Source: Octopus bimaculoides (taxonomy: Eukaryota). From it: a DNA stretch of 64,000 nt. A model generated the notes under the pieces. It was not told the origin of the DNA, did no database searches, and saw only the letters and a list, made by a program, of their open reading frames with translations. Each line of letters opens with the position of its first letter. Within the stretch, counting starts at the first letter, position 1. Below, piece by piece: positions 8,096-33,730 of this stretch. The stretch covers positions 6,309,244-6,373,243 of the forward strand of contig NC_069000.1 of the NCBI RefSeq assembly GCF_001194135.2, read 5' to 3'. Both the position numbers and the translations under genes were made by a program.

Positions 8096-8122
8096 ATTCA
8101 CCTGATAGTATTGAAGAATCTG
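8096..8122 (+). CDS. NCAM: 27-nt symmetric microexon (DSPDSIEES)
   Basis: T-rich tract + tatag acceptor, G|gtaaga donor, open in phase 1-1. Confidence 0.7.
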
Positions 8123-10397
8123 GTAAGAACTATAACACAATTGAGGGAATTATAAATTCTTCTTCAAACCATTCTTTACCTCTCTTGCTAAATTTAATGA
8201 GCACTTGTTCCTGCAGGCATTTCCTTCTGGTACCTGAAAAAAAAAAAATATAAAGATTTATCGTTGGTTTATATATTCTCCTTAAGTTTTTATCAAATGT
8301 TGTACTTTTAATCTATTTCTCTTCTCTCAAAGGTCTTTTGGGCATTTTATTTATTTATACATTATTATTATTATTATTATTATTAAGGAAGTGGGCTGGA
8401 ATGACAGAATGCATAGCAGTATTTCTTCTGACTCTTTAGATTTTGAGTTCACATCTCACTCAGATCAACTTTGCCTTTCATCTTTCTAGTCTTTTTTAAA
8501 TAAACCAGTTGAGGACTGGAGTTGAAGTAATAAATCCCACTACAAAAATAAAAATAAAAAATCAGGCGTTGCGTCTATTGTGGAAAGAATCGTTGTCTAT
8601 CATTTAAATGATTGATCAGTTGATAGTTAATAAGTTTTAAAGGAACTTTACCTTCTAATACAGTAATATTAAACGTTGTTGTTGTTGTTGGTGCTGCTGC
8701 TAGCTGGCATGATTATGTATTAGAACTGTTTAACTATAAACATAATTGCCTCCTCTTAAACTTCTAAGCTAATTTGGTGCTCCATTGATGGTATTCTATC
8801 TTGATTTGCTGTTAGTCAAATGTCAGCCTTGTCTAGGTTGGTTGGTTGGTTGGTTGGTATGCCAATGATGGAATATAGAGTGGACATATCCCAAAATCAC
8901 AGGAACTCTCTATTGCTTAGCCAATGGTGGAACGTAGGGTATGAGGTCCACTGAAGACACTCTGATTGTCAACCAAAGCCTCACACTGAATGCCTTACCA
9001 TTTTTCAAAGTCAGTCTTTGATGTTTGGACAGGATTCTTATTTAGAAGAATTTAAACTCTAGTCACTGTCTTCAGTTCCCAATTGTTTTTTTTTTTTTTT
9101 TTTAGATAAACTGATACATATCAAAACAGCTTTTTCTAGTATATTGTAATCTTGTTTGCCCTGTCACAATGTCTATGAGCAGTTTTCAAACCTGTTGAAA
9201 ACAAAGAGAATGATTTATTTTAAGTGAATCCACCTTGCAGATTAAAGCTGCAAAATACATAAATAAGTCCAATGTAGATAGTGGAAAACTGATGAGAGTA
9301 CTACTCCTTACTTTGCATTTCAAGTTCTGTTTATTAATATCTCAACTAGGTATCTTTATATCTCAGCTCATTTTTATTTAGAAATTTACCTTTTTATATA
9401 AATATTTATCCTTTCTGTAAGAATGGCTTCAGGGACACAAAAAATTATGGAACTGAAGTAGAACTCTTGCACATTTCAGTGTTGCCTAAATAATTGTTAA
9501 CAAAAAGCATATTAGAATTGGTTTTTAATTAACCCATAAAGCGCTGGGATTTGCACTTACATAGCAAGGACTGCTGAGCACATTTTATGAAAATGAGACT
9601 ACCATGCAAACATAAAAAAAGACAACAAAAAACATATCTTCTTAGTATATAATGGTGGCAAGTTTTACATCATCTGAAAAGTCATTAGTTGAACTATTAG
9701 TCCTCTTGCATTCTGGTGGGGGGTATTGGAGCGTTTGAGTGACATTAGACCCCAACAAACGCCCATAAATTAAATGCATCTATCTGGGCCACGATCGTGG
9801 CCCGTTGCGCTTTATGTGTTAAGCCTAATAAGATTATTAGGCTTACTGACTTGCTGTTTATTTAGATAATTTTTTTACTGAATTTTAAATAACAGCTTTG
9901 TTCTTTTTATAGAGTAAACTTTAAAATAATTTTTAATTTGCGCAATTTCTTCTATANNNNNNNNNNNNNNATATATATATATATATATAAAAAAAGAAAA
10001 AAATATTTCGCTTAAGTGAATCTTGTTTTGCATACTGTGTGGAATTGTCCTTTTTTTTTTTTTTAACATTTTTTTTTTTTAATGATGAATATTAATTAGA
10101 AATTTTTTCACTGCTGCTTACTCTTACTTCAAACCATGTCATCATGCTTGTGTTACGTGTTTTATTAAATGTTGTCTTATTTGTATTTTTTTTTTTTCTC
10201 TCTTTAAATGAACCCATTTTTATTGACATTCCAATAATTATATTAAATTTAAATTTAAGGTGGCATACTTAATTCAAAAGTTTTCTTCATTAAATAGTTT
10301 TCATTTATTTTCCACTATTTCTAAACAACCCAATTGATTGACTGAAGTCTACAATTTATTTTAGAAATACACTTGTTTGTATATTTTTACTCTGCAG

Positions 10398-10427
10398 AAT
10401 ATCCAGATGAATATGTAGATGAATATG
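10398..10427 (+). CDS. NCAM: 30-nt symmetric microexon (EYPDEYVDEY)
   Basis: tttttactctgcag acceptor, G|gtaagc donor, open in phase 1-1. Confidence 0.75.
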
Positions 10428-12818
10428 GTAAGCTCACTGTGCACCTTACAAACACCCCAGATAATATACCCCTCCGACCACCTTGTTCATCTAAAGTTGC
10501 TTTAAGCACTCCACATAATTTGGCTGTTATTACCAATATGAAGCACCAGAAATACCTAGAACTGGTGGTGCTCAATATTTATTGGGGAAGATTTTAAGCT
10601 AAATGCATAAAAAGTTTTAACATTTTTCAGTTTTATTTAACAGCTAAATTGGAATCACTGAATTTTTAAAAAAAATTTTATGTTCTCATTTTACAGCAAT
10701 AGAAACATTTATTTCATGTATTTATTGGTTTAATCTTTTCTTTTTTTTAATCTTTCCTCCTTTCTCTGTGTGTTTGTGTATTGCTAAATGTTTCTATACT
10801 TACCTTTTTTTTCTAGATATATAATTCTTGATATTGGCTCTCCTACTGGTTCCAAGAAAGGACTTTGTTGTTTTATTTTATATTTTTTTAAGGAAACCCC
10901 TCGAGTAATTCTTTCCCCATTACTTGCAATAGACTCTACTTGACTGCTTCAAGTAAAACTGAACTTTCTTGCAATTTGCATGTCTGAATGTGCAAGGTTA
11001 TAGCAACTGACCTAACATTTTAATCATATTTTGCTCCAGATAAGTGCTAGAGTAAATCAACTTAAGATCAGAGCTGTTTCAGATATTAGTGTCTTGGATT
11101 ATATAATGTCCAGAGGGCTGTTTTCAGAAACATTTCAATGGATTTTGTTTCTATTACAACATTGGGGATGTGATTTAAGGGAGATTTGGCTGTTGTTTCT
11201 AACAGGTTGAACTATCATCCCTTATTTAAACAGTTGTACCTTTTGGTCAGAAAGATGGTACCGAGTGGCCATCAGTAGGAATATGCAGCACTTAGTGAAG
11301 CATTTTATTTTTGATATACAATAAATGTAAAAGTGATCTTCTGATTGGTTTGGTTACTTGGTTAATATTGTTAGTGTGTGTCTTCCACAAACATTTGTCC
11401 TCTTAACATAAACTTCACGGTAAACTCAGTGTGACTTGACATTGAAGTTGAGGCTCTTTAAAATACATGTACAGACCCCACTTGTTACAGATGCCACATG
11501 ATGGTAGAGAACTGTAGATTTGATTGTAATGTGAATCATTAAATCATTTCAATATACCTGCACTCTATGAAGCACAGTTCAGTGGCATTACATGAACTCG
11601 AACCATTCAGCTTCTTGTCTGATTTCCTTTGTATGCATTTGGTTATTTGCTGCTTCTTTAAATAAATTACACACTCGTGAAATCAGAAGTTTGTAATATA
11701 CGCTTCTCAACATGGTGAGATAAACCAGCTTCTTTACAATGTCCCACATTATTTTGAACTTTCACCTCCATTATATCACATTGCATGGATCATCCCTTGT
11801 TCATTCATAGTATATCATTTTATCAACATATCTTTATTAGATCTGCCTGACTCTCATGAGAAATCATCAACTAAGAATTTTAAAGGCTCTTGCATGAGAT
11901 CCCAGTTTATATAACAATCACTCTTTGTTTGTCATGTGCATAGTCCAGTATATAACTTTTTCCTAGTCTTCTACATTGTGCCACAAATCAAAATTCCTAA
12001 ACTCCTTGAACAGTAGATTCTTGATTGTTTTCTTGACAGTTTTTCAACTGCTTCATTAGTTCGAATGCTGTGTTATCCAACACTTCTCTCCCAATACGAT
12101 GGTGGTGTTTTGGTGAAGCTTCTTAGAAACAAATGCATCAACATCTTGAATGTATCATCTTCTGACAGCATCCAGTGACTCTTTATTCGAGTGTTTCTTG
12201 CATATTTTTATGTTGGCATTTCTTCTCCAATGACTTTTCTTTCATATTTCACTTTTGTCTCAATATCTTTGTGTTGTGTGTGTGTATCGTAGTGAGAGGT
12301 GTGGTTAATTAAAGCAGTTTGATTGTCTTATCTTTTTTGGTATTAGTTATTCCATGATGACATTAGTGCTGTTCAGTGTTTTCATTCTCTCTTCAATAAT
12401 CATATAAAATGTGATGGTAAAATTTTTTTTTTTTAATAATGGCCATAACTATACCTGGAAATATTATAGAAAAAAAATAATAATCTTCACTTAGATAACC
12501 TAATTAAACCATTATCAGATTTAACTTTTAAGCCAAATTTCATGTTTGTTTGATAGGGTTTTTTTAAATAAAATATTTTATAGCTAATTATTTCTTATTA
12601 ATTATCCTGCTGTCCATTACTTACAATAACAACCATTCATTATGTAAAGTGTTCATTCATCGACATTCCATTACTTTTCACTGACAACAATTCACTTTTG
12701 GTTCTGCAATATTTCAACTCTGCTTTGTACTGTCGACTAGTATATGTGTGTCATCTTCACTCTGATCTCTCCAATCATAAATGAAATAAAGATGCCCCTG
12801 GCTCATCAATCATTTCAG

Positions 12819-12881
12819 ATCCATCACCTGCTGACACAGCATCAAACCCGAAAACTAATATTTACAAGGCTACAACCAAAG
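12819..12881 (+). CDS. NCAM: 63-nt symmetric exon (DPSPADTASNPKTNIYKATTK), with a possible in-frame upstream acceptor at 12792
   Basis: catttcag acceptor, G|gttagt donor (same hexamer as the donor at 3765), open in phase 1-1, P/S/T-rich. Confidence 0.65.
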
Positions 12882-13828
12882 GTTAGTTTGCAATAACTGT
12901 AATGGGAACCGTTCCTTGGTCCCTAACGGCTGCCAAACATTACAGATGGCTAGTCTTGTCAGTCATTCATTCATTCATTCATTCATTCATCTATATTTGC
13001 TCATCTTCAGTCTTTTCTTTTATTTTCATTCAAATTTTGAGAGAGAAATGTTTCAAGCTTCTTTCGGTTTGGTCAGTGTTATAAAGATTTCACTTTCAAA
13101 ACGAGGCAGCATGTTCCTAATTAATTCTGCTTCTTAACTCATTAATCCACTTCATTAGCTTCTTTTTCTCTGAATATATCATATGAAGAATTTTTCTAGC
13201 TTTCATCCATCTTTTCACTTCAGAGTTTTCCATGACAAATTTCCAAGTAATACATTTCTATATTTGGTTAATTTCTCCTTCATTTTAAATTGAAGGTTTT
13301 AGAATATACTTAAATTAAGATTGTATTCCTCCTATCCAAGGACCTGGATACATTATGTTAATTTCCTTTTTTAAAAACCTAAAACAACTTCGGGAATATT
13401 GTCCCAATAACTTACCAGAATAATTGTATAATATGGTGACCTGGCGAGTTTATAGAATGGCATTGATGGGTGGAAAGTGTTTTTGGTTCCTGCCCTTCAT
13501 TGAGTGTAGGGTAAGAAAAAGCTGGTTTACATTAGGCCCGTATCTACTTTAATCTTTGTACAATATTATTAAGTCCCCCATCCCTTTTTTAAGGGCTTAT
13601 TTGGAGTAAATCTTTCTGTAAGATTAAAACATAACGAAAATGCATTAGTCAGTCTTTATTGACAGGAAAACTCAATAACATTGTTTCTGGTTATGTTAGT
13701 AGTTAATTGCAAACTGTTTCTCTTTTCAGTTGGATAAGAAGTTACAATTTCTTTTGTTAAAGAATTTTCTCTTTCTTTTTTTTATAAAAGTCTGCCAAAT
13801 AGCTTTCATTTTTATATACATGTATATA

Positions 13829-14627
13829 CAGGGTGCGATGGGTAAATTGTCATTTTATAATCTCAATTTCGTGCATGCGCATTGTTTATGATTTTGTCAA
13901 CTACACAGTATAGTAGGGTCAGTTGGGCACTCTGTGAGAAAAACAGCACAACAACACAGTTCACACTGCCAGAAATTTGGAAACAATATGCTGTACTGTT
14001 TGGGTGTCAGTCTGAGGACCTGTACCGAGAGTGATAAAAATCAAACATCCCATCAACATCATGGTGTTTGGAGTGATTACTAGTGATGGTGACGTTATGC
14101 CTCCATTCATCTTCCCACATAGCCTCAGACTCAACACGTAGGTCTACATCAAGTGCCTGGAGGAGGTAGTGTTTCCTTGGGTCAATAGGGTGACTGCTGG
14201 AAGACCCTATGTCTGGCAACAAGAGTCTGCACCATGCCATACAAGCAGGAGAACCCAGTCATAGCTGTCAGACAATTTCTTTGACCACATCACCCCTAAC
14301 CTAACACCCCAAACTGCAATCCCCCCTTGATTATTGTGTGTGGGGTACAGTTGTGTGAGAGACCAACAAAACTCCTTTGAACTGAAGGCAAGGATTATGG
14401 CAGCATCTACCAACTTAAACAAGGAGACTGTCCAGAAGAGTTGCAGGAGATTCCGAAGTCGTGTGGATGCCATGGTTGAAGCCAATGGCAATTTTATTGA
14501 ATGAATTTACTCGTTAGTATTTCAAGATATTTTTATGCAATTTTGGTAAATATATCTGTTAAAATGAGATGTTGGTGTTATTTTCATTTTTGGGTAATTT
14601 AGATGACAGTTTGTTCACCGCACCCTG
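13829..14627 (+). mobile_element. Decayed Tc1/mariner-superfamily element (maT/rosa-like) with transposase remnant
   Basis: Imperfect ~25-bp TIRs starting CAGGGTG, left TA. The + strand reads KHPINIMVFGVITSDGDVMPPFIF...YVWQQESAPCHTS...NPLDY with stops and frameshifts. Confidence 0.85.
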
Positions 14628-14666
14628 TGTATATGATAAAGATTTAAATAAACTAATAGTTTAACA

Positions 14667-14742
<76 letters not shown>

Positions 14743-16980
14743 TTGTGTAGACATACATCAGTCAGAATTAATATTAAAAAACTAATTTCGAGATTGACAA
14801 GATTAAAGATTTAAATTCCATGGCTTCATTCAATTTTTGTGTGTCTGTCTGCATGCATGTTTGTATGTATACATATGTGTAAGTATGTATGTATTATACA
14901 CACACACACACATCAACTATAAAAACAATAAAGAATATTGATTCAAACATTGTTGTCAGCTGAATGTTATATTTGTGTATAGGAACAATCAGTCCTAAAT
15001 TGACTGTATTCACTGCATGCATTACTATTTGTTGCACTGTTATATGTATGCATTGAATTTGAAAGCGTGTGTATATGTCTATAGATAGATATTAAGCTCT
15101 TGTTGAAAATATTTGCTCCTTATCACTTCAGTTCTAAATGAAATTTTTACCTCTGCCTTTTAAACTTATCACAAATATAAAACCTAGTTGTTTAGCCCTG
15201 AGTAAGTAGGCCTATGATCAGAGGTGTTCCAGTTATGCCCAACTCTTTCTCTTGTATGTTGCATATCTAGGACTACATTGACTAATGTCTCTCTATACTT
15301 TCTGAAGATAGTAGAGAGTAAGTTTGAAGGAGGTTTGCTTGCATTTTTAGCAGGTCAAGCAACTATGTAGAGGTGCTCTGTCAAATGTGATTGCTTATTT
15401 ATTCACATTGTTTTGGTTTAATCATGCATTATCTTATAGCTTTGAGATTTCAATTGTGTGACTGTTGATTTTTAGAATAGATTATATTTTGGGGTATTGT
15501 AATGGGAATGTATCTTAGCTTCAATAGTTTTGTGTGCACACATTTGTTCTGCTTTAAGATTAAGCTCTTTTAAATGTATTGAGCTCTTTTTGCATTATTT
15601 TTATAGCCAAATGTAGAATCTAGTGTTATATATCAATCAAATTTTGACACATCATGAAAGTGAATTTAACAATTTAGTGTGTTGTTAAATAGTTCTGCAA
15701 TGCAGATGATGTATATATTTTCTCACAAAATTCTGAGACTGCCAAATATCTACTGCAAGAGAATCTTTATTTTGCTCTATAAAACTGCTCTGTTACTAAC
15801 ACACTCTCAACCTATTGATTGATCTGCTTAAAACAGTTCCATTATTTGTTCATATTTTCTGTTAACCCTTTCCACTCAATACTCATTGATTCCCACCTAC
15901 TAAATAGGTGCCTTCCAAAGTTTTTAGTTATGAAAAATTGTTTAAACTAGTCTACTTTAAAAAAAAAAATAATAATGAACAAACAAAAAAGTGCTATCAT
16001 CTGGGCAGTCAGAATTTTGATATCTTAATGGCTTGAAATATTTAGTGTAGGAGTGCAAAGGGATTTTTTTCAATTTTTGGTTTAACAAACCTTTATTGCA
16101 TGGTGTGTGTGTGTTTTTTTTTTTTTTTTTTTTGCTCTTTCTCTTCTCCCATTTGTTAACTGACTATAAGCTCAAACAATTCATTGCTTTATATTCTGAA
16201 TTCTCTGCCATTGAAATTCTCTGTATGTGTGGTGTCAATTACTGTCTGTTAATTTTCATTATTGATTTTTGATGAGCCAATCCATTCACCTCATAAGGTT
16301 TCATTTCATTATTCGTGGATCAATTACTATATAATCCATCATTATTGCAATACATTTTCATATTTATACATTGAATTAAGAAATTGTTTTTCCAATTTCC
16401 AGCTGAAAGGTAGGTAAGTTGTTGAAGGCTAAAAGCTGTCTGATTCCTCTCTAGTTTCTTTGTTTTAATAAAATTACATTTATTTCTCTTCCAAATCAAA
16501 ATATTTTCTAGCCTTATCAAACTGTCTTAATTTTGGAACTAGTTTTTTGTCTTCATATACCACTTTCCTACTTTAGAGACTTCATGTAGGAATATATTAC
16601 TTAACACTTATCAAATAAGTGACTATAGTCAGTTTTTTGGTAAGTTAGCCATTAAATTATTTGATTTTCAGTTGTATGTACTTCTATTACAAAGAACACT
16701 CTCACCAACTTCCTTGTATTCTTCTACTCCTGATTTTTTTTCCTTACAAACTTTGTTCCAAGTTGAGGCCTCATTTCAACATTTAATATCCTGAACTACT
16801 TGTAAGCTAATCATAACTGTAATGACATGTTTTTAATAACATTCCTCATCACCATTTTATGCTCATTTTGGGTTGACTTAGTTATCTCTAAAAGTATGTT
16901 GGCACATTTTAGTCTTCTGTTACCTTCTACCTGAAATTCATCCTTAAGGCATCAACTATCACCATTTCTTCCACCCCACC

Positions 16981-17012
<32 letters not shown>

Positions 17013-17846
17013 TTCCTCATACATATCACATGTTGCTACTGCCTTCTCTCTCTCTAGTACAATACAATCTCATTTCTTTTTTCTCAGCTCCTATATTCCA
17101 TTGTTCCACCCCACCAGCAGTATGCATTCCATTCGTGTGTATTCTCCTCTTTTGTTTCTACTTTTTCCTCATTGTCAGCATTCATGCAATATTGCATTTT
17201 ACACACAAGCAATATATAATCTCTTTTTCACAGCATTACCAACTGAGGCTCTTTCTTTTTTCTACCTTGTTTTTTTCCATAGTTACCTATGCTTTTGGAA
17301 CCCCCACCTTCTCTGTTAAGAAACAGAAGCAGTCGGTTATTTGTAGGGAACCGCCCTTTGTTGGCTTCTTTTAGTTTTCTACCTCATAGATACCCTACCC
17401 CTCTATGTGTCTGAATTAACTACACTGTAGTTAGTACAGACACATATCATCTCCGAGTACCACCTGCTCATCTTTATTTATCCAGTTGAGAGAAAATTGG
17501 TCTTCTTAATGCCTTGTTAAGCTTATTTCAACTGTAGAAAAATTGCTCTCTTTCTCTCTCTCTCTCTCTCTCTCTGAAGTCCTTAATTGTCACTACAATA
17601 TTAACTTCTGTGGCTCTGAAAATTCTTTCATAAATTAACTGTTTTGAGAAGCTGTTTGACTCTCTCTTTTTTTTTTTTTTTTTTTTTTTTTCCTTCTCTC
17701 TTATTTCACACCACAATATCTCAATCAATGTACAGCTATTACTGATCTTTCTTAAAATAGTTTCCTAATAATCAATGTGAAAATGTGTTTAATTTTAGAC
17801 ATTTGCAGTTTCAACAGTTTTCAATCATTTCTCTGAAACTAATCAA

Positions 17847-17880
<34 letters not shown>

Positions 17881-18023
17881 GCAACAAGATGGAGTTAACA
17901 TGTTGTCTATTTGACTTGGTCATTGTTTGATCTTATCTAATTGTTCCAGCATTTTTTTGAAATTTGATTTATGTGCTGTTTTGTTTACTAGTGATTTGCT
18001 GCAAGTTATATTTTTCCTTTCAG

Positions 18024-18062
18024 GAAATATTTTAGATCCTGGACAAACATCGAAATCCATAA
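18024..18062 (+). CDS. Candidate 39-nt (or 48-nt, to 18071) symmetric exon (GNILDPGQTSKSI)
   Basis: Strong acceptor tttttcctttcag and open in phase 1, but both donors (A|gtgatt) are weak. Confidence 0.35.
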
Positions 18063-19236
18063 GTGATTCAAGTGATTCTTTTTTTCTTTCTTTTTTTTTT
18101 GTTAATCTTGCCATTAAGTCTTTCTGTACTAATTTTCATTTATAGCTTTTGAATTGACAAAACTTTTCCATAAATTAATATATTTATCTCTTTCAAAACT
18201 TAATAATCTTTCTATTTTAATGATTCTTTGCACAGTAAGGAAGGAGGTTACAAGTAACATTTAGAATAAAACTTTAGTTTAAGCATGTCAAAATTGAAAT
18301 ACATATATATTTATATATGTATATATATATATACTGATTGGTCATTACAATTTTCAAATATAATGGATTTTTTCTTTTTAAAGCCTATATAAATTTAATG
18401 GTTTTTCTCTCAATATAAATCTCCAATTTGTTCACTGATTTCATTGTCTATTGTACATTAGTTTCTGCTTAAGATGGAGGCATGTTTTAAAACCTGCAAT
18501 TAACCATCATAAGGATGAATTGAGCTGTTTTTTAATTAATCATTATAAATCTTAGTGATTTAATGTGGCAAGCTGGCAGAATCGTTAGCGTGCTGGACAA
18601 AATGCCAAGCATTTCTTTTGGCACTTTAAGTTCAAATTCTGCCAAGGTCAATTTTACCTATGATCCTTCCAAGATTGTTAAAATGAGTACCTGTCAAGTA
18701 CTGGCGTTGGTGTAATGCGCGCACGCACACATTCTTCAGATTTGCTGGCCTTGTGCCAAAATAAGAAGTTTTTGACAACAGCACAAGTATTTGTCAGCAT
18801 TTCCTTATGGTTTTATGTTTGTATATATTTTTTTAATGCTAATAATGCATTTCAAATATTACTATATAAATAAGGATAAGATCCATATTTTAAATAGCAA
18901 TCAAATCAAGTGACAGCATGAAAGTAAAAAAGAAACTATATAGGTTATATAATAATTATAAAAATTTATAAATAAGGGTCTCGAAGAGATACTACCATGC
19001 TTGAAATAGCAATCAAAACCTGACTCTAAAACCACATCATGTATTCAAAATACAGCACAAGGTGAAAGGACAAATAGACAAATAAAACCAGAGGGTGTGA
19101 AATTATCCAATTTTTACTGGGATTGAATTGTTCGACTAAAGGTGCATAGCTGCAGTCAAATGACTTAAACCAGTAAAAGAATTAATCTACACACACACAC
19201 AACCAGTATTTTGTGATAATGGTATTGAAAGCAAAA

Positions 19237-20338: not shown

Positions 20339-20373
20339 CTAGGTTGAGGAAAAAGTTTGTGTGCTGTGTTGAT

Positions 20374-20412
<39 letters not shown>

Positions 20413-20880
20413 AAGACTTTATTCAAAAACAACTACTATTCTTTAAAATAAAGACCATCATTTTCCATGACCTTCTGCTAATGATCTGCAAGCTTTCAGA
20501 TTTCGTTAAAATACCAATCCCTTGGCTTTGAATTGAAAAATTCTTGACAGGCTTCTTCAACTTCATTGAATGACTCAAATCGGTGACCTTTCATAAAGTG
20601 CTGCTTTGATCGGAAGAGACCATAGTCAGATGGAGCAATGTCTGGACTATAGGCTGGATGCGGCAGAACTTCCACACCGTCCAATTCTTCAATCTTGTTA
20701 CTGGTTTTTCTGATGGTCTGCAGTTTGCATTGTCTTGTTGAAACAAAGCGCGTCTTCGAATATAGTGAGTCACCATTGAACACGGTGATATGAGCTGAAT
20801 GAACACACACACACACACCACAAAAATATATTAAAAAAGCATTATTTTAACACAGCACACAAACTTCTTCCTCAGCCTAA
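20339..20880 (-). mobile_element. Internally deleted mariner (DD34D) element
   Basis: 31-bp TIRs with 2 mismatches (taggttgaggaaaaagtttgtgtgctgtgtt). ORF 20496-20816 contains LPHPAYSPDIAPSDY, and QDNA appears in the adjacent frame. Confidence 0.9.
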
Positions 20881-21779: not shown

Positions 21780-21902
21780 GTCCATCTTTTTCCACTATGA
21801 GCCCTTCTACTAAGAGCCCTACTAGTATCAGTGACGTAAGCTCTAGCTCAACACGTGACACTACTGTCACTGTGACCAATGTTGTAACTTCAGTGACCAC
21901 TG
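21780..21902 (+). CDS. NCAM: 123-nt symmetric Ser/Thr-rich (mucin-like) stalk exon
   Basis: tttttgtacag acceptor, G|gtgaaa donor, GPSFSTMSPSTKSPTSISDVSSSSTRDTTVTVTNVVTSVTT in phase 1-1. Confidence 0.8.
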
Positions 21903-24900: not shown

Positions 24901-25141
24901 CCAAAACATGAACCATGTTTGATGCATATTGATATTAAAGATACTATATTGCNNNNNNNNNNNNNNNNNNNNNNNNNGGGGGGGCATGTAGCAGAACATT
25001 GAACTAAGGAATACCACAAAGTACTTTACATTCCATGTAGAAAACAGCTTTATATTCCATGTTGCAGAAGAATATACAGAACTGAAGAATATCCAAAACT
25101 GTTTTGCTTTATGTAGTAGAACATAGTTTTGTTATTATTAA

Positions 25142-25365
25142 GGCAGTGAGCTGGTAGAATTGTTAGCATGCCAGGTAAAATGCCTAGTGGTATTTCATCT
25201 GTCCTTACATTTTTGTGTTCAAATTCTAGTATGGTCAACTTTACCTTTCATCCTTTCAGAGCTGATAAAATAAGTTCCAGTGAAGCACTGGGGGTTGGTG
25301 TAAACAACTGACCCCATTCCCTCAAAGTTGCTTGCCTTGTGTCCACATTTGAAACTTATTATTAT
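25142..25365 (+). mobile_element. SINE (family B)
   Basis: Similar to 19237, with (ATT)n tail. Confidence 0.8.
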
Positions 25366-25768
25366 TAAGGAATACAGAAAATTACTTTACATTCCTTGTG
25401 GCAGAACATTGGACTATAAAATATGTTTAGAAAGAAATAATTTGGGGAAGTTTGGACCATGTAAGTGTTGTTGGTCAGCTAACAGCACCACCATTTACAC
25501 TGCTTGCTGTAGAGAATATGGGCCCCGTGAAAGAGGTACAGGATGACCATGAAGAAAGAGGTTGGAAGATGGTGGGAGAAAATGAGGTTGATAGAGTGAC
25601 AGTGAAAGACAGGAGGAAGAAGAGGCAGTTGTCTTTTTGTTGGGGACTTTACAAACTACCTGGGTTATTGATCTTGATTGATTGATTTCTAATGATGTTA
25701 TGGTTGTGCTCGAAGTGGAGAGAATTTATTTGGGAATGTTGGGCCTGGTTGATGATAGAGAACCAATT

Positions 25769-25801
<33 letters not shown>

Positions 25802-26948
25802 AAACTGTTTTGAATGCTGTGAATACTGAAAAATCAATAACATGACTGAAAACTGGTGTTCAAACACTGGTAAATGCTTATTTATGGTTTCCCACCACCT
25901 CTCAAAGTAATACAAATAAGATTCTCAGAGATAGTCTTCAACATTTTCAGGTTTGAGAAGTCTTTGAGTTCATTTTTTTTATAAATTTTAATTGAAGTGC
26001 TTTCAGCATTAGCCCCTTGTGAATGTTCCCTTCTCCCCTCAGTGAGACTTCCTTTTTAATCCTTTACCTATTCAGGCCATATTCCTCTTTGTTTTTTCCC
26101 CCCCGGGAATTTTGAAGCTTCACTTTTGACTATCTGAATATCTCATGTAGTGAGAATTGGTAAATTCCATGTGAAAATCCAGTCCAGCTAAACATTGATC
26201 AGACAGAATAAAGATAGAATTTGACTGTTTACCAATGTCTGCTTGCAGATAGCGCTATTTTAGGTGTTGTTTTGTGTTCACCCACACCCTCCCTCCCCCT
26301 CAATGTTTCAACAATGAACTTAACACAACTCAACACTTTTAAAGGGATATGAGAAAAATGGAAATTGCTTTCAAATTTTAGATTTTAATAATGATGGATG
26401 GCTTGAGGGCACAGATGAAGTTTCAAGCGAAAAGTGTCAAATGAAGGGCCTTAGTCCTTGATCAGCTGACAGTAATACTGATGGGATTAGATTCACAGAT
26501 AATTTCAGATGATTCCCTTAATTTTTAAGTACAGGCACTAGTCATTTCCTTGCATCCAGGGGCTGATAGACTGAAAGATGTAGCAATGTTTAATAGTAGC
26601 TCCTTGCTTTGATATACTGGGGTACACGACACTGATATGTTGCTTTCTTATTATTTTCTACTGTTAAGTATGTCATTTGATAAAATATATTTCTCTTTTC
26701 TTCTAATTGAACCTACAACATAATTACTAAGCTGCAGTGAAGAAAGCTTTAATTATAAAACAGTTGACTTGTTGTAACCTGTTTAAAAGCACTGGAATAT
26801 TGATAAGAAATCAAAACACTGTTGCAACTTCAGATATTTGAATCAGTACCTAGTAGAGGTGAAGGTAGTTGGAATAAGCTAAATGCATTTGTTCTTGGAG
26901 AATATAGGTGTGACTGTTTCTATTGATAATGTCTGCTTGCCCTGTTAG

Positions 26949-26978
26949 ACAGAACTAGGTCCCCAAAAGCTCAAGAAA
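26949..26978 (+). CDS. NCAM: 30-nt symmetric microexon (DRTRSPKAQE)
   Basis: tctgcttgccctgttag acceptor containing two TGC motifs, consensus A|gtaagt donor, open in phase 1-1. Confidence 0.65.
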
Positions 26979-27943
26979 GTAAGTATTTAAAATAGATTTG
27001 ATATCATTGGGCTTTGTGGGAAAACTCTACTCCGTATGAGCACTTTTCATTCTGTAAATATGGAACAACATATTGAAATGTCAAGATTTTGGAGGTGAAA
27101 CAAACTATAGAAATTTTCTCCCCGTGTCAGCTGTCAAGCAAACTAAAGACAACTTTGAGGAAATACTGCCATAAAGTTCCAGTAGTGTGACTGTGTCTGC
27201 ACGATTCTGGTTTCAATATCACCGCTGTACAGCACATAGCCTTGGCATGACTAAAGCCTTGAAGGTGAAATTTGCTTGACAAAACCCATGCAAACTTGCT
27301 GTCTGTGTCTGGGAGAAACTACTTGTGGAAATTGAGCACAAATACCTTATTACATTCAATTATACCCAGGTGGACTTTAGTGTTCATAAAATACTTCCCA
27401 GAGAAGTACTAACACTTGAAAGTGGTGCTATTACACAAAGAGTGAATTAACCAATTTCTAACATGGTTTGCGGTTGAGATTATTAATATAATTTCTATCA
27501 TACATAACACGTTGAGTTCAGAGATTTGTCTTATAACTCTAATTGATATAGTAATTACTGCTCATTATTAAAATTTTTTGACATTTTGCAAGTGTTTCAA
27601 AGTTAGTATAAAATTGGATGTTTTATTAGTTTTGCTTCCATTTTTGCTTTGGATTTGTATATGTGTCTGAGTGTATACACAAATGTGTATGAGAGTGTAT
27701 ACACAAATGTGTGTGTGTGTGTGTGTATGTATACATACACATATACAATAGTCTATATTTTACTTAGTATCAAGAATTTTGTTTTTAGTCCAAACAATAA
27801 GAAGCAGCATGAGTTATGTAAAGCTTCATCTAATGGGTCTTCATCCAGTGCATTCCCTTTTTTTTTTTTATTATTCCAGTATATGATTATTTTTTCTCTC
27901 TTCGATTCTACACTTAGTTTGCCATTTGCTTGTCTCTGCTTCA

Positions 27944-27983
<40 letters not shown>

Positions 27984-29403
27984 AAAACTTCGTACATTAA
28001 TCTCATGCTAACTCCTTATCTTTTTTTTTGTTTGTTTTTGATCAGTTTATTTTACTAATGTCATAATAGGTGTATTTTTATGAACTAGTTCAATGCATTT
28101 CTTTCTCATTTCTGGTTTATACAGACTCTATATACTTATGTATTTTTTATACACCTAAAGGATTTAATTATACATTTATGCTACATTCTCTTCAATGATT
28201 TCATCTTGTTTTCTATTCACTGTCAAGATTTTTACACCCACATACTATTTTAGGGGTTGTGGTGTGCAGTAATATAATTGTATTGTTACACATCTACCAT
28301 GGTTCGATTTTAGCAGTATCCTTCAGATTTTTTATTTATTCATTGATTCATGAGAAAGAATGATATTCTTTTGCTGTGAAAATACCACTTTGTAATTAGT
28401 TATTCTGGTGTTTTCTGCAACCATGATTTGTAAAAGTAAATTAAAAATGAACAAATGCAAAAATTCAGCCAGTTAAATTTTAGTGTAGCACTCTGAAGAT
28501 GCAGTTTCAATGATGGCAACCTTGAAAATGCTTCTGGTTAGAAAGGATTTTGTAGTTGAGCATCTCCTGTGGAACTTATTAGTGACTGCACCTTTATCAG
28601 TTGAAACCCTGCCAAGGTCCTTCTAGCATGGTTGATAAAATAATCACCAGCACAGGTGTTGATTTAATCTTTGAAACATGTAGCACTGTTTATAGTCGAC
28701 TGGAAGTACTGAGCTAAAATCTCATTCAGTATTTAATGTCCTTCCTCTAGACTTCAACCCATTTGTTTCATTTGAAATACACTGATTTTTGTTGCAATTA
28801 GTTTTGGAAATAATGATGAATTTAGTCAAATAATTTGGTCGTTATTAGGATGGTTTTTGGAGTATAAATTAACATGTAATTTTTATGGAAGTATCATTTT
28901 AAGATAAGCAGTCTCAAGATGGTTGGTGTCAAAAGGGTTAACGATTGAAGTCTTTTGTTAATCTATTCCCAGGTTAATCTTGATCCCGGCAAATGTACAA
29001 TCAAAGATGTCCCACCTGTGACCATTTTGCTCTTATGCTGTAAATGTTGGGGGGTTATATCTTCCCATTAAGACAATAGGGCATAATTTGAGAGACTTTA
29101 GCTGTTATTTCTAGTGACCATGTAGAGGTATTACCTGCAGTAATACAGCGTCAATGTTGGAAGTAGTTGAGATGGCACAGTGAGGTTTATCAGTTAAAGA
29201 GGTCAAATCCTGCCTCTGTCAAATCAGTCACCTGTGTTAGAGTGGGGGTTTTCATTGGCTTATGTTAATGTAGCTAATTAAATCAATCCAACCAGCGTAC
29301 AATCATTATCTATAATTAATTAACTAGTTTTTGTTTTGTTATTTCGGTGTTACACATTTAAAGTAATCACTATATTTAACACAAGTTAACCTTTATTAAT
29401 TAT

Positions 29404-29608
29404 AGCTGGCAAAATCGTTAGCATGCCGGACAAAATGTTGGCGGCATTTTGTCCGTTTTTACATTCGAAGTTCCACCAAGGTCGACTTTACCTTTCATCC
29501 TTTTGGGGGTTGATAAAACAAGTACCAGTTGAGCACTGGGGGTTGATGTAATCGACTTATCCCCTCCCTGAAATTGCTGGCCTTGTGCCAAAATTTGAAA
29601 TCATTAAT
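29404..29608 (+). mobile_element. SINE (family B)
   Basis: Similar to 19237 and 55460. Confidence 0.8.
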
Positions 29609-31431
29609 TATGGCTATTATGTTGGTAAAAACAAAGTTTACAAAACAGTTATTCCATTTGATTTTAAATGTTGTGTGTGTGTGTATGTATGTATATATAA
29701 ATAAAATGCGTGTGTGTATTCACTTGCATATTTTTTATTTCTTGGTTTTATTTTTGCTTTTAGACATGCACACATGCCTACACACATTTTTTTGTTTTGG
29801 TTTTTGTCAACTTTTTAGCTTCAAGTCCCTTTAGACCCTAGTAGTATTAGACCAACACTTGAGTCCCAACTATATTTTCCTTTATCTACTAGTATAGTTT
29901 CCCCCATACACATAGCCATTAGTTGTTGCAGCAGCAGTAGTAGTAGTAGCAGCCATGCACCACTTTCTGTCCTTGTTAGCAAGTACTTGTTGCACCTGAG
30001 CATTCTAGACAAGGTTTTACTTTATTCTTAGTACCACTTTCAAAACCAAATAACTGTTGCTGTGATGTTTATTAATGACTTTTGTATGTACTATTTATTA
30101 TAATTGTTATTATTTCATGAGTTTTTATCTATTTCAATGATCATCTCAGCTTCTATTATTTAACTTGTGCAGATATATAAACCCACAAGCTTATTTAGAT
30201 TGTCTTTATGCAATTTATGTTTAAATTTATAAGTTCTTTTTTTCATTTACTTAATGTTAATTTGGAGGAACTTGTGTACACCTGTGTAATGGTTTACCTG
30301 AGATAAATTTAGTAATTAATTGTTAATGAGTGGAACCATTACGTTATATCGGACATGTATGTCCACATTCAGAAGGTATAAGCCTTGATAACAATGATCA
30401 AAATGGAGGCACAAGCTATTAGATTTGGGAATATCCATGACATTGGTTAAGTAATCAAGAAAATTGTAATTTTACCCCAGGCAACTCAATATTTAATTTT
30501 CAAAATGGTTTTAATAAGAGTAAGGATAAATGTCATTGAGAAGTTTTTTCACATGGTTTATTTGCTTTTTCCCTTCAGTGTGTGTGTGTTTTATCTTTTG
30601 TTTTTCCCATAGGGTCGTGTTTTAGATTTAGAATTAATTGTGCATTAATTATGAAATGCAAAATGAATACGTTTAATAGGATGTGTGTATATAGAGAGAT
30701 AGAGATGTAATTTTCAGAGTTGGAAGTTCAGTTTCACCCCATCATTATTAGATGTTAGTGTTTCTACAGGAAAGCTCTTTAAATTTTATCAGTGTTTAGT
30801 GTTGTTAAATGTTTTTCTCCCTTAACTAAAATAGAAAAAGAACAAAAAAAAGCATTTCTGTTTGTCAATATATTTTTAAGTAGTTACAGTAATAATGTTA
30901 TTAGAATTATTGTTTAACATTCTGAGCTCAAATCTGCTGATGTCAGCTTTACCTTTCATCCCTCCAGGGGCAATATGATAAGTACCTGTTGAGCACTGAA
31001 ATTACTGTAATTAAATTCTCTCCCTCAAAATTTCAGGCTCTGTGCTTTAAATATAAAGTAATTGCTTCACATTCTGAGTTCAAATTCTGCTGAGGTCAAC
31101 TTTACCTTTCATCCCTCCAGGTACCAATCAAGTACTGGAATCAATGTATTCAATTAACACACACCCTCCCTGAAAAAATTATGGGCCTTGTGCCTATATT
31201 GGAAAGCATTTCTTTAATGATTTGTGTTTATTGAAAATCTCTAGATGTTTAGATGTTGTTATCACATCTCCACCAGCATATTGCCCTTGTTGGCAAGGTG
31301 CACAATTTCATGTTGTTACTAGTCAGACACCTAGTCAACATGGCAGAATAACCCAGATGGGAGGTGATGATGGTAGTCATGGGGTGAGGTTCGCATCAGA
31401 AAGATCAAATAACAAATCAGTTACTGAAATA

Positions 31432-32589
31432 CAGAATGCAAGGGGTATTTGAGGACATATGCGGTAATTCAATGAAACAACTCTAACCTAGCAAAAAACC
31501 AAATGTATTTGAATAAAAATGTCTACACATGTTCTTAATAAAGCTAACTTATAACATTATTCTATGAATCTACTTTTTACTTCATTGATGGCTGCAAAGT
31601 GGGACTGGAATTGTTGAATTGTTGCACTAAATGGTCCTTATTTGACATCCTTTGGACTTTGGTGGTCTTTAGTGACACTATGGCATTGTAAGGGTGTTGA
31701 TTGGTCTCCTTTTCAGTGATGTTCTGAACATAGTAATCCATGAAATTTAAATTTGGCATGCATGGAGGCCATGAGTTTGGAGTTACATGATCATAACCCA
31801 TTCTTGGGTTATGTGGGTGTTAAGTCTTGATGAAACACATTTGGCCTTCTACTACGTACTTCAACCATCCAGGGTTTAACAACCCTTTCCAGCACCTCTC
31901 CGTAACCAACATCATTAATTCTAAGACATAGAAAGATGTGAAGTGACACAACATGACCTTCATTACTCACTACTCCTAAAATCATAACAGTTGCTGGAAA
32001 TTTAGTGTACGTCAACTCTAGGATCATTGAAGGGTCTCTATACATAACCATCTATCGTTTCTCCTGTTAGATTTTGGCTCATCTCTGATGAGAAAAACCT
32101 CAGCCAATACCAAAACAAGCCATGTTTGTGAGGGTTTTACACCTTAAGGAACTGCTTGATGCTGGTCAGTTTTCTCGAGTCTTTGTACAAATAAATTGGT
32201 CTTTACTCAGTACATAGGACATGTATCAAATGTCCATATGCGCCACATTTCTGATAGTGTAATCCAACTCGTGAAGTTCTTAAACAATGGCCCTCATTGA
32301 TTTTTCTGGGATCATCATTTTCAACCTGTTGGATTAATTGTGGTATCTGAATGTCTAAGCTGAAACATTCCTGTGTGAGGCTTCTAACTTCATCTACACT
32401 TTTATGTACAAAAGCTCTTGCAGCATTTTAAGTGTTAGCAATTTCTAAAACATGGCAACAATCACTGAATGTCTTTTCATTTCTTGTATTAGCATTTTAT
32501 TTGCTGTGGCATATCTGAAAGAAATATAAACATTTTGTTTTGACGAGAGTAATATACTGATAATTTTCCTCAAATACCCTTACACCCTG
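31432..32589 (-). mobile_element. Decayed Tc1/mariner-superfamily element related to 13829-14627
   Basis: TA flanks and imperfect TIRs (cagggtgtaagggtatttgagga). Minus ORFs read KFPATVMILGVVSNEG...VFHQD and WPPCMPNLNFMDY. Confidence 0.85.
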
Positions 32590-33557
32590 TATTATTGATA
32601 AACTGGTGGGAGTCATTTTATTCAGCTAATTCTATTGATATTGTATATTACCATCGATAAGTCTTCTAATTTGCTGAATTATTAAAAAAAAATTTATGGC
32701 AATGTTATTTTCAAGTTTAGAATTTCCTACCTTTTAGATTAAAAATTTCTCTTTAATATTTTAAATTTGGAATAAGAATAATGGAAATGCTTATAGGAAA
32801 TTCTGTTTCATGCCAAATGGCCTAAATAATAATAGTGCATACCAGTACTAAATAGAATTAATAATTTTTGGTACAGTTTGAGATTGTCTAATCAGCAGAC
32901 TTTTGTTGAATGATTATAGTAACACATGACATTGTTTTCTTATGTATGTATATTATTTATTTAGCTGGTAAAAATAATTTCTAATGTCAGTATCTTAGTT
33001 TCTGTTCAGATTTAAAACAATGGCAGTCTATACAACACACTCAATACCAAAAATAGCTTTTGCTTTATTGTGCTATCAACTTTTTCCTTCAAGATCTTTT
33101 TTCGGTCTTGCTATATATATAAGAACATTTTTAATATCATATAAGGTGAAACTTTTGTTGCTTTAATTACTGCTGTTTATTACACATCAATAGTTTAACA
33201 ATTACATCAGTTAATTTTTCTCTGGAAATTTGCTTTTTATTTTTTAGAAATATCTGCAATCTTCATTTGTTGCTTTAATATTTCAATTGTCTTTGCTAAT
33301 TATTAGTCTTTTAAGAAAGTATTTTTAAATGAATGTTGAGTCCACATCTACCATCACTGCCCCAATTCCTCCCCCACCCCACTCCTTCCACTATTCATCC
33401 TTTATCGTATATATATATATATATATTGAACACATTTGTTTCTAAGTTCTAAAACTATAATTATTATTAATAGTAATAATAGTAGTAATAATAATTAAGC
33501 CGAAAGATCTTCAATAAATCCTGCCCATTTTTACTTGTTTATTTCTGTTCTTTTCAG

Positions 33558-33664
33558 TGGACACGGGTAGTCGAATAACGGATTCCACTGCATCTTTCAT
33601 CAGCAATTCTCACCTGTTAATGGCAGTGAATGCCTTCTTGTGTTGTCTGCTGGCACTGCTCTGA
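33558..33664 (+). CDS. NCAM: Alternative terminal exon encoding a GPI-anchor signal (VDTGSRITDSTASFISNSHLLMAVNAFLCCLLALL*)
   Basis: tttctgttcttttcag acceptor in phase 1. Small residues, a polar spacer and a 16-aa hydrophobic tail end exactly at TGA. Confidence 0.85.
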
Positions 33665-33730
33665 GTTTAAAAATAACAGCAACAAAAACAACAACAAAAA
33701 AAAAAATTATGAAAGACAGCCTCCCGTGCC

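What the first reader, a model, noticed from the sequence alone, without database searches (positions are those of the whole stretch)
8096..33664. Combinatorial microexon-built stalk between FN3-2 and the membrane anchor
Seen: at least five short exons over ~19 kb, all phase 1-1, multiples of 3, stop-free and with GT-AG sites. Each has distinct chemistry: acidic (DSPDSIEES), Tyr/acidic (EYPDEYVDEY), Pro/Thr (DPSPADT...), mucin-like (41 aa) and basic (DRTRSPKAQE). Most are invisible to the ORF track. Any subset splices in frame onto either the GPI or the TM exon. Inference: five independent cassettes and two anchors give up to 64 ectodomain/anchor combinations tuning stalk length, charge and glycosylation. 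This is analogous to the small exons of the vertebrate NCAM1 muscle-specific domain, but sits after the second FN3 rather than between the FN3 domains. It may be an undescribed cephalopod isoform code.
Basis: partly seen in the sequence, partly recalled or inferred. Interest (0 to 1): 0.82.

Follow-up and report, generated by a model that had tools for sequence, protein, structure and literature searches.

The report
Octopus NCAM stalk cassette exons, already annotated

Summary
The window carries the 3' two-thirds of the O. bimaculoides gene that RefSeq names neural cell adhesion molecule 2 (5 Ig, 2 FN3, then a GPI or TM anchor).

- **All annotated isoforms are reproduced.** Splicing window exons reproduces all 12 RefSeq isoforms (XP_052831192-203) residue for residue.
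- **Four of the five exons are real.** These are 8096-8122 (DSPDSIEES), 10398-10427 (EYPDEYVDEY), 12819-12881 (Pro/Thr-rich) and 21780-21902 (41-aa mucin-like). Each is an annotated cassette.
- **They are conserved.** O. sinensis has all four, with the first three 95-100% identical against 86% for the whole protein. Argonauta hians has recognisable versions of the first three.
- **The fifth is unsupported.** 26949-26978 (DRTRSPKAQE) is in no isoform model and scores no better than opposite-strand decoys.
- **One real cassette was missed.** It is 18024-18071 (GNILDPGQTSKSISDS).
- **The assembly gaps do not matter.** Both are intronic, and annotated isoforms bridge them in frame.
- **Sixty-four combinations is only arithmetic.** All cassettes are phase 1-1, so any subset is in frame. 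RefSeq lists 11 stalk/anchor combinations in O. bimaculoides and 14 across two Octopus species.

Tuning of stalk length, charge and glycosylation, and tyrosine sulfation of EYPDEYVDEY, are inferences. I found no paper on these isoforms, but the exons are public. Interest is modest.

The parts
7327..7525 (+). Constitutive exon for the second half of FN3-2 (VHIKEKEPW...VIIVTKK). It ends in phase 1 with G|gtaagc and is the upstream splice partner of every stalk cassette.
   Evidence: It is part of all 12 RefSeq isoforms. Pfam places fn3 at residues 618-707 of XP_052831192, and the stalk begins at residue 712.
8096..8122 (+). Cassette mx1: 27 nt, phase 1-1, (D)SPDSIEES, acidic.
   Evidence: In O. 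bimaculoides X1, X2, X5, X7, X9 and X10. Identical 8/8 in O. sinensis. RSPGSLDES in Argonauta.
10398..10427 (+). Cassette mx2: 30 nt, phase 1-1, (E)YPDEYVDEY. It has three Tyr, each preceded by Glu.
   Evidence: In O. bimaculoides X9 and O. sinensis X11, both GPI forms that also contain mx1. Identical 9/9 in O. sinensis. EFPDDYLDEY in Argonauta. Each Tyr has 4-5 acidic and 0 basic residues within +/-5.
12819..12881 (+). Cassette mx3: 63 nt, phase 1-1, (D)PSPADTASNPKTNIYKATTK, rich in Pro, Thr and Ser.
   Evidence: In O. bimaculoides X2 and in UPI00071C330A. In O. sinensis X1-X3, X5, X9 and X10. 19/20 identical in O. sinensis. Argonauta ...DPKSNVYKASSE aligns to window 12800-12880.
18024..18071 (+). 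Cassette mxN: 48 nt, phase 1-1, (G)NILDPGQTSKSISDS. It ends in A, so the next codon becomes ATA (Ile) at the start of the TM exon.
   Evidence: In O. bimaculoides X2 and X4, and O. sinensis X1-X5, all TM forms. It appeared in my blind enumeration. 8/15 identical with a 3-aa indel in O. sinensis.
21780..21902 (+). Cassette mx4: 123 nt, phase 1-1, a 41-aa mucin-like segment with 23 Ser/Thr. It has a strong polypyrimidine acceptor and a weak gtgaaa donor.
   Evidence: In O. bimaculoides X1, X3, X7 and X8, and O. sinensis X8. 25/40 identical with a 3-aa indel in O. sinensis. Composition.
26949..26978 (+). It is unsupported and most likely a chance match.
   Evidence: Absent from all 28 isoform models examined. 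It ranks 11 of 2347 + strand candidates, and 13 minus-strand decoys score at least as well.
33558..33664 (+). Alternative terminal exon, coding part only: (V)DTGSRITDSTASFISNSHLLMAVNAFLCCLLALL followed by a stop. It has small residues and then a 16-residue hydrophobic C-terminus, as in a GPI-attachment signal.
   Evidence: hydropathy rises to 3.2 at the C-terminus. It ends O. bimaculoides X7-X11. 31/34 identical in O. sinensis.
48382..48479 (+). Third alternative terminal exon, used by isoform X12: (G)SNLNTWSWHVWKFFSIIHKVFSFLSFSYGGQ followed by a stop. The product would have no TM segment and no convincing GPI signal.
   Evidence: Not seen in the O. sinensis models.
60530..60746 (+). TM exon: a phase-1 acceptor, a short extracellular linker, the TM helix and the juxtamembrane motif DLICYFKFEKGVTMFLVSTCKK. 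The rest of the cytoplasmic tail lies beyond the window.
   Evidence: 70/71 identical in O. sinensis.
9957..9970 (.). Assembly gap inside the intron between mx1 and mx2.
   Evidence: Bridged in frame by isoform X9.
24953..24977 (.). Assembly gap inside the intron between mx4 and the GPI exon.
   Evidence: Bridged in frame by isoforms X7 and X8.

Best explanation
The interval is the membrane-proximal part of the Octopus bimaculoides NCAM/FasII/apCAM-family gene, which RefSeq names 'neural cell adhesion molecule 2'.

**Shown**
- After the last FN3-2 exon come five small symmetric phase 1-1 cassette exons: 27, 30, 63, 48 and 123 nt.
- Three alternative 3' routes follow. One is a terminal exon encoding a GPI-type signal. 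One is a rare terminal exon encoding neither anchor. The third is the TM exon 27 kb further on.
- Every cassette starts and ends after codon position 1, so any subset stays in frame.
- Only the junction codon changes. It reads Val, Ile or Leu at the anchor exon, and Asp, His, Gly, Glu or Gln at the cassette starts, depending on the last base of the upstream exon.
- Annotated products carry 0 to 50 extra stalk residues.

**Inferred**
- The cassettes tune the length, charge and glycosylation of a disordered stalk.
- mx1 with mx2 forms a 19-residue patch of net charge -9. Its three Glu-Tyr sites fit the preference of tyrosylprotein sulfotransferases.
- mx3 and mx4 are O-glycosylation spacers.
- The choice of terminal exon sets GPI versus TM anchoring, as in vertebrate NCAM1, insect fasciclin II and Aplysia apCAM.
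For: - **Exact reconstruction.** All 12 RefSeq isoforms are reproduced from window exons. Their stalk sequences are listed.
- **Identity of the gene.** Pfam finds 5 I-set and 2 fn3 stretches. A beetle fasciclin-2 matches at E = 8.9e-72. The nearest solved two-FN3 structures that are not titin are NCAM2 and NCAM1, and their alignments stop at the end of FN3-2.
- **A further source.** The UniParc record UPI00071C330A, which its source does not name, carries mx1+mx3+mxN+TM.
- **Conservation.** O. sinensis has orthologous cassettes. mx1 is 8/8, mx2 9/9 and mx3 19/20 identical, against 76% for the adjacent FN3-2 exon and 86% overall. Argonauta has mx1, mx2 and mx3 equivalents.
- **Junction codons behave as phase-1 splicing predicts.** O. 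sinensis mx3 starts with His after FN3-2 but Asp after mx1. mxN starts with Gln or Glu in the same way. The TM exon starts with Ile only after mxN.
- **Composition.** Charge, Ser/Thr content and hydropathy are.
Against: - No RNA reads could be examined. RefSeq XP_ models are computed predictions, and which combinations really occur on single molecules is unverified.
- Splice-site, frame and phase features alone do not exceed the opposite-strand control.
- The apparent coupling of mx2 with GPI is contradicted by the Argonauta model, which puts mx1+mx2 in a TM form. That model may, however, simply include every exon.
- Sulfation, O-glycosylation and GPI attachment are inferred from composition only.
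Confidence: 0.88

Rival explanations
1. One reading: five independent cassettes, including the basic exon 26949-26978, combine freely with two anchors to give up to 64 regulated isoforms.
For: All candidates are phase 1-1, so any subset is in frame. Several combinations are annotated.
Against: - 26949-26978 is in none of the 28 models and scores at chance level.
- Only 11 combinations are annotated in O. bimaculoides, and 14 in the union of two species.
- mx4 is never modelled together with mx2, mx3 or mxN.
- mx2 is always modelled with mx1.
Confidence: 0.07
2. The cassettes are splicing noise or artefacts of automated isoform modelling and have no function.
For: - XP_ records are predictions.
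- Donors of mxN (gtgatt) and mx4 (gtgaaa) are weak.
- The odd O. vulgaris model CAI9737963.1 and isoform X12 show that doubtful models exist.
Against: - mx1, mx2 and mx3 are 95-100% identical between two Octopus species whose neighbouring FN3 exon is only 76% identical.
- They are recognisable in Argonauta, at 58% overall identity.
- The same exons appear in separate annotations of three genomes and in UPI00071C330A.
Confidence: 0.06
3. The stretches are chance AG...GT open frames in long AT-rich introns, not exons.
Against: This is refuted for 8096-8122, 10398-10427, 12819-12881 and 21780-21902 by their exact presence in RefSeq proteins. It remains the best reading only for 26949-26978.
Confidence: 0.02

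Closest known systems
Vertebrate NCAM1 muscle-specific domain (small exons 12A-12D, also called MSD1a-c plus AAG)
   Same: A cluster of very small alternative exons in the extracellular, membrane-proximal part of an NCAM-family gene. It is found in forms with different anchors and carries O-linked carbohydrate (PMC2120321, PMC2115936, PMC2290859).
   Different: - The vertebrate exons are numbered 12A-12D, which places them after exon 12 (PMC2120321). From my own knowledge that is between the two FN3 domains. The octopus cassettes lie after FN3-2.
- In chicken heart the MSD behaves as one unit (PMC2120321). The octopus cassettes are modelled in several partial combinations.
- No sequence homology was tested or is claimed.
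Alternative GPI versus TM anchoring in NCAM1 (NCAM120 versus 140/180), Aplysia apCAM and insect fasciclin II
   Same: - The architecture is the same: 5 Ig and 2 FN3, with a GPI-signal terminal exon upstream of the TM exon.
- NCAM120 is GPI-anchored, and only TM apCAM is internalised (PMC4810158).
- Beetle fasciclin-2 isoforms show GPI-type and TM ends.
   Different: The beetle fasciclin-2 isoforms differ only in the anchor and in cytoplasmic inserts. They have no extracellular stalk cassettes. Octopus adds five.
Neural microexon programmes (exons of 3-27 nt, dependent on SRRM4/eMIC)
   Same: These are short, symmetric, in-frame, conserved cassettes in a neuronal surface protein. mx2 has a UGC directly before its AG (ctctgcag).
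   Different: - Only mx1 is 27 nt or shorter.
- Tissue specificity and regulator dependence could not be tested.
- Most of the acceptors lack the UGC element.
Sulfotyrosine and mucin stalks such as the PSGL-1 N-terminus (functional analogy recalled from memory, not tested)
   Same: An acidic cluster with several Tyr sits next to Ser/Thr-rich segments that can be O-glycosylated.
   Different: There is no homology and no evidence of sulfation. In the annotated isoforms mx2 and the mucin exon mx4 never occur together.

Membership tests
NCAM / fasciclin II / apCAM family of IgSF adhesion molecules | Five Ig-like domains followed by two FN3 domains | tested here: met
   Pfam on XP_052831192 finds I-set in 5 stretches and fn3 in 2 stretches. 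Residues 301-833 of that protein are encoded by the window.
NCAM / fasciclin II / apCAM family of IgSF adhesion molecules | Sequence relationship to named family members | tested here: met
   - RefSeq names it neural cell adhesion molecule 2.
- A beetle fasciclin-2 matches at 29% identity over 86% of the query, E = 8.9e-72.
- Apart from titin, NCAM2 (2jll) and NCAM1 (2vkw, 2vkx) are the best PDB matches to the FN3 pair.
NCAM / fasciclin II / apCAM family of IgSF adhesion molecules | Alternative GPI-linked and transmembrane forms from alternative 3' exons | tested here: met
   The GPI-type terminal exon 33558-33664 and the TM exon 60530-60746 both accept in phase 1. Isoforms X7-X11 use the first and X1-X6 use the second. 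Actual GPI attachment was not tested.
NCAM / fasciclin II / apCAM family of IgSF adhesion molecules | Homophilic adhesion and neural expression | not testable with these tools
   No expression or binding data were available.
NCAM1 MSD-type small-exon cluster | A group of small alternative exons in the extracellular membrane-proximal region | tested here: met
   Five cassettes of 27-123 nt are annotated in alternative combinations.
NCAM1 MSD-type small-exon cluster | Position after exon 12, between FN3-1 and FN3-2 | tested here: not met
   All the octopus cassettes lie downstream of the last FN3-2 exon. The stalk starts at residue 712, after fn3 at 618-707. This is therefore an analogue, not a member.
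NCAM1 MSD-type small-exon cluster | O-linked glycosylation of the encoded segment | not testable with these tools
   Composition is compatible: mx4 has 23 Ser/Thr in 41 residues and mx3 has 6 in 21.
Microexons (strict definition, 27 nt or less) | Exon length of 27 nt or less | tested here: inconclusive
   mx1 is 27 nt and meets the definition. mx2 (30 nt) and mxN (48 nt) meet only the 51-nt definition. mx3 (63 nt) and mx4 (123 nt) meet neither.
Microexons (strict definition, 27 nt or less) | Neural-specific, SRRM4/eMIC-dependent inclusion | not testable with these tools
   No RNA data were available. Only mx2 shows a UGC next to its 3' splice site.
Tyrosine-sulfation site (TPST substrate motif) | Tyr with an acidic residue at -1, at least three acidic residues and no basic residues within +/-5 | tested here: met
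   All three Tyr of mx2, in the X9 context, have Glu at -1, 4-5 acidic residues and 0 basic residues within +/-5. Sulfation itself was not tested.
GPI-attachment signal | A C-terminal hydrophobic tail of about 15-20 residues, preceded by a short spacer and small omega-site residues, with no following cytoplasmic residues | tested here: met
   ...DSTASFISNSH-LLMAVNAFLCCLLALL followed by a stop. Window-9 hydropathy rises to 2-3.2 over the last 16 residues. No dedicated GPI predictor was available.

The most novel reading that the evidence does not exclude
The cassettes may form a regulated code conserved across Octopoda, rather than interchangeable spacers. In this reading:
- A strictly conserved acidic module (mx1+mx2, net charge -9, three Glu-Tyr sites) gives some NCAM isoforms a sulfotyrosine ligand-binding patch.
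- A choice between mx3(+mxN) and the mucin exon mx4 sets stalk height.
- Both choices are coupled to anchor type and cell type.

No NCAM-family protein is known to me to carry such a module after FN3-2.
Probability: 0.25. Interest if true: 0.5.

Novelty: already known. Interest (0 to 1): 0.27.

Why it matters
**Practical value**
- A reader without tools recovered four real cassette exons of 27-123 nt from raw sequence.
- The same criteria also produced one false positive and missed one real exon. AG/GT, frame and phase alone do not discriminate in long AT-rich cephalopod introns.

**Biological value**
- The octopus orthologue of the plasticity-linked adhesion molecule apCAM/NCAM has a far more elaborate extracellular stalk than the insect orthologue examined here.
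- Three cassettes are better conserved than the adjacent folded domain, which points to function.
- The GPI/TM switch that governs learning-related internalisation in Aplysia (PMC4810158) is present.

The exons are already public, so the remaining open questions are their regulation and biochemistry, not their existence.

Tried and rejected
1. **First protein search.** The search for homologous proteins with the window-derived Ig4-FN3-2 protein returned only two distant arthropod proteins. The octopus proteins are in that collection, so I did not take this as absence.
2. **Concatenated exons.** A single exon, window:1365-1718, worked and gave the O. vulgaris orthologue among giant Ig proteins.
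3. **Search for squid, cuttlefish or Aplysia orthologues.** The alignment-based search with the C-terminal regions found nothing. Conservation outside Octopoda is therefore untested.
4. **Metagenome scan.** A scan for cephalopod transcripts found no relatives.
5. **Genomic DNA of relatives.** The look-up of encoding contigs placed the O. sinensis, O. vulgaris and Argonauta genes at 115-176 kb, which is too long for DNA to be returned. I could not compare introns or test conservation of 26949-26978.
6. **Repeat context.** The cassettes with 300 nt on each side are single-copy within the window. Only low-complexity flank matches appeared.
7. **Splice-site, frame and phase scoring.** Used as stand-alone evidence, it was rejected because the opposite-strand control does as well.
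8. **Pfam on putative transposase remnants.** No hit. A PDB sequence search did confirm one mariner remnant.
9. **Literature.** I found no paper on octopus or cephalopod NCAM isoforms.


Full report
**What the window contains.**
The + strand carries the distal part of an IgSF adhesion gene. Reading the frames and splice sites gave these constitutive exons:

| Exon | Coordinates |
|---|---|
| Ig4a | 1118-1260 |
| Ig4b/Ig5a | 1365-1718 |
| Ig5b | 2709-2814 |
| FN3-1 | 3594-3764 and 5148-5282 |
| FN3-2 | 6449-6576 and 7327-7525 |

- The last FN3-2 exon ends after codon position 1 (AAG|gtaagc).
- An exon starting at 33558 encodes (V)DTGSRITDSTASFISNSHLLMAVNAFLCCLLALL and a stop. Its hydrophobic C-terminus is of the GPI-signal type (hydropathy).
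- The exon 60530-60746 encodes a short linker, a TM helix and DLICYFKFEKGVTMFLVSTCKK.
- Both of these exons accept in phase 1.

**Is the observation in the sequence, and is it more than chance?**
The mucin-like segment is at 21780-21902. With the true boundaries all five are AG/GT-flanked, stop-free, phase 1-1 and multiples of three.

- I enumerated every such candidate between the FN3-2 donor and the TM acceptor on both strands and scored splice sites with generic position weight matrices.
- This gave 2347 candidates on the + strand and 2479 on the - strand.

The stated features by themselves are therefore what chance gives in these long AT-rich introns. External evidence was needed.

**Identification.**
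- A first word-indexed protein search found nothing close.
- An exhaustive HMMER search with the exon 1365-1718 found an 850-aa protein. It is CAI9737963.1, 'neural cell adhesion molecule 2 isoform X5 [Octopus vulgaris]'.
- Searching with that protein returned RefSeq clusters for O. bimaculoides (12 isoforms, XP_052831192-203, plus a UniParc record not named by its source, UPI00071C330A), O. sinensis (13 isoforms) and one Argonauta hians model.
- Splicing the window exons listed above reproduces each of the 12 O. bimaculoides isoforms exactly. The match runs from residue 301 to the C-terminus for GPI forms and X12, and to the end of the TM exon for TM forms.
- The window is therefore O. bimaculoides, and this gene is already annotated.
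- Pfam finds five I-set and two fn3 stretches. The stalk starts at residue 712, directly after FN3-2.

**Which cassettes are real.**
The stalks after ...IIVTKK are as follows:

| Isoform | Cassettes | End |
|---|---|---|
| X1 | mx1+mx4 | TM |
| X2 | mx1+mx3+mxN | TM |
| X3 | mx4 | TM |
| X4 | mxN | TM |
| X5 | mx1 | TM |
| X6 | none | TM |
| X7 | mx1+mx4 | GPI |
| X8 | mx4 | GPI |
| X9 | mx1+mx2 | GPI |
| X10 | mx1 | GPI |
| X11 | none | GPI |
| X12 | none | terminal exon 48382-48479 |

The cassettes are mx1 = 8096-8122, mx2 = 10398-10427, mx3 = 12819-12881, mxN = 18024-18071 and mx4 = 21780-21902.

- The basic exon 26949-26978 occurs in none of the 28 models from four species.

**Assembly gaps.**
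- 9957-9970 adjoins a (TA)n/A-rich tract.
- 24953-24977 adjoins a G run.
- Both are intronic, and no exon touches them.
- X9 joins mx1 to mx2 across the first gap. X7 and X8 join mx4 to the GPI exon across the second. Both joins are in frame.
- TM isoforms also bridge the further gaps between 33.7 and 50.1 kb.
- No O. bimaculoides isoform has stalk residues that the window fails to encode, so nothing annotated is hidden in a gap.

**Conservation.**
Identity to O. sinensis, per exon:

| Segment | Identity |
|---|---|
| Whole protein | 86% |
| Adjacent FN3-2 exon | 76% |
| mx1 | 8/8 |
| mx2 | 9/9 |
| mx3 | 19/20 |
| mxN | 8/15, with a 3-aa indel |
| mx4 | 25/40, with a 3-aa indel |

- In Argonauta (58% overall identity) the stalk reads RSPGSLDES-EFPDDYLDEY-...-GPSIISDSSTDDSTSDPKSNVYKASSE. 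That gives recognisable mx1, mx2 and mx3.
- The junction residues change exactly as phase-1 splicing predicts. In O. sinensis mx3 begins with His after FN3-2 but Asp after mx1. mxN begins with Gln or Glu in the same way. In O. bimaculoides the TM exon begins with Ile only after mxN, which ends in A.
- The annotations show the same exons in different combinations, so they are not copies of each other.

**How it most likely works.**

*Shown:* the cassettes are symmetric, they are used alternatively in the models, and there are three alternative 3' routes.

*Inferred from composition:*
- The insert ranges from 0 to 50 residues.
- mx1 is acidic, with net charge -4.
- mx1+mx2 gives 19 residues of net charge -9. 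Its three Tyr each have Glu at -1, 4-5 acidic residues and no basic residues within +/-5. That matches the classical preference of tyrosylprotein sulfotransferases (established knowledge).
- mx3 (6 Ser/Thr and 3 Pro in 21 residues) and mx4 (23 Ser/Thr in 41) look like O-glycosylated spacers.
- Choice of the terminal exon at 33558 versus splicing on to 60530 sets GPI versus TM anchoring. This is the same switch as NCAM120 versus NCAM140/180, and as apCAM, where only the TM form is internalised after serotonin (PMC4810158).

*Modelled regularities:*
- mx2 is always modelled with mx1.
- mx4 is never modelled with mx2, mx3 or mxN.
- mxN appears only in TM forms in both Octopus species.
- The Argonauta model places mx1+mx2 in a TM form, so coupling of mx2 to the GPI anchor is not secure.

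**Comparison with what is known.**
- The closest analogue is the NCAM1 muscle-specific domain. It consists of small exons 12A-12D, is O-glycosylated, and is present in forms with every anchor type (PMC2120321, PMC2115936, PMC2290859).
- The octopus cluster fails the positional criterion, because it lies after FN3-2 and not after exon 12. It is an analogue, not a member.
- A beetle fasciclin-2 isoform set shows the GPI/TM switch and cytoplasmic inserts but no stalk cassettes. The stalk elaboration is therefore not general to the family.
- Solved NCAM1 and NCAM2 FN3 structures align only up to the end of FN3-2.

**Novelty and verdict.**
- The exons and 11 stalk/anchor combinations are already in RefSeq.
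- My literature searches found no paper describing them.
- A 2026 preprint quantifies O. bimaculoides tissue-specific splicing but does not mention this gene.
The claims of an undescribed code and of 64 isoforms are not.
- The remaining interest lies in the untested regulation and biochemistry, especially the strictly conserved acidic/Tyr module.

**Limits.**
- No RNA reads and no genomic DNA of relatives could be examined. The genes are 115-176 kb, so no DNA was returned.
- Conservation outside Octopoda could not be tested.
- My splice scoring uses generic matrices, not cephalopod-trained ones.

Noticed in passing
window 48382-48479 (+): RefSeq isoform X12 (XP_052831203) ends in a third alternative terminal exon, GSNLNTWSWHVWKFFSIIHKVFSFLSFSYGGQ followed by a stop, lying between the GPI and TM exons. 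It has no TM helix and only moderate hydrophobicity. It could give a soluble form, like the secreted NCAM isoform, or it could be a cryptic exon. It is not in the O. sinensis models.
   Followed up: partly
window 46026-46046 (+): A 21-nt phase 1-1 stretch, AATGTGAAGACGATATTGCAT, translates to (E)CEDDIA. It has a 17-T tract upstream, a poor gAG acceptor and a gtgaga donor. It resembles the 'ECEENIA' segment that the O. vulgaris model CAI9737963.1 inserts between a truncated GPI exon and the TM exon. The tblastn E-value is only 0.3 and my splice score is low (rank 174). Whether this is a real TM-specific microexon or an annotation artefact is open.
   Followed up: partly
window 12792-12818 (+): The 18 nt just upstream of the mx3 acceptor translate in frame to GSSIIS, matching GPSIIS in the Argonauta model. 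An in-frame AG at 12790-12791 would give a 90-nt long form ((D)APGSSIIS + mx3). This could be an alternative 3' splice site or a conserved intronic regulatory element. The acceptor scores poorly.
   Followed up: partly
window 20496-20816 (-): A mariner-type transposase remnant lies in the intron between mxN and mx4. Residues 33-104 match SETMAR and Mos1 transposase catalytic domains in the PDB at E = 1e-13 to 3e-12. Pfam gave no hit. A second transposase-like ORF pair at 31577-32051 (-) was not confirmed.
   Followed up: partly
window 33665-34132: A 402-N assembly gap starts 67 nt after the stop codon of the GPI exon. The first AATAAA is at 34194, beyond the gap. The 3'UTR and poly(A) site of the GPI-form transcripts cannot be defined from this window.
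   Followed up: no
beyond window end (after 64000): The last 38 residues of the TM isoforms (SEKKPLKNEDTDDD...) are not encoded in the window. O. sinensis and Argonauta models carry an additional 33-aa acidic cytoplasmic insert, QETTLLTDKQQKEEVEQAGEENKEAATEEGVTD. It is absent from all 12 O. bimaculoides isoforms and may be an unannotated alternative exon downstream.
   Followed up: no
junction of window 8122 and 21780: Joining mx1 to mx4 (isoforms X1 and X7) creates the sequence EESG across the splice junction. That is a Ser-Gly preceded by acidic residues, which is reminiscent of glycosaminoglycan attachment sites. This is speculation from memory and was not tested.
   Followed up: no
tool behaviour: the search for homologous proteins missed the O. 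bimaculoides, O. sinensis and O. vulgaris NCAM2 proteins when queried with the window-derived protein and with an alignment of their own C-terminal regions. It did return them when queried with P0030. A negative from that tool should not be read as absence.
   Followed up: yes
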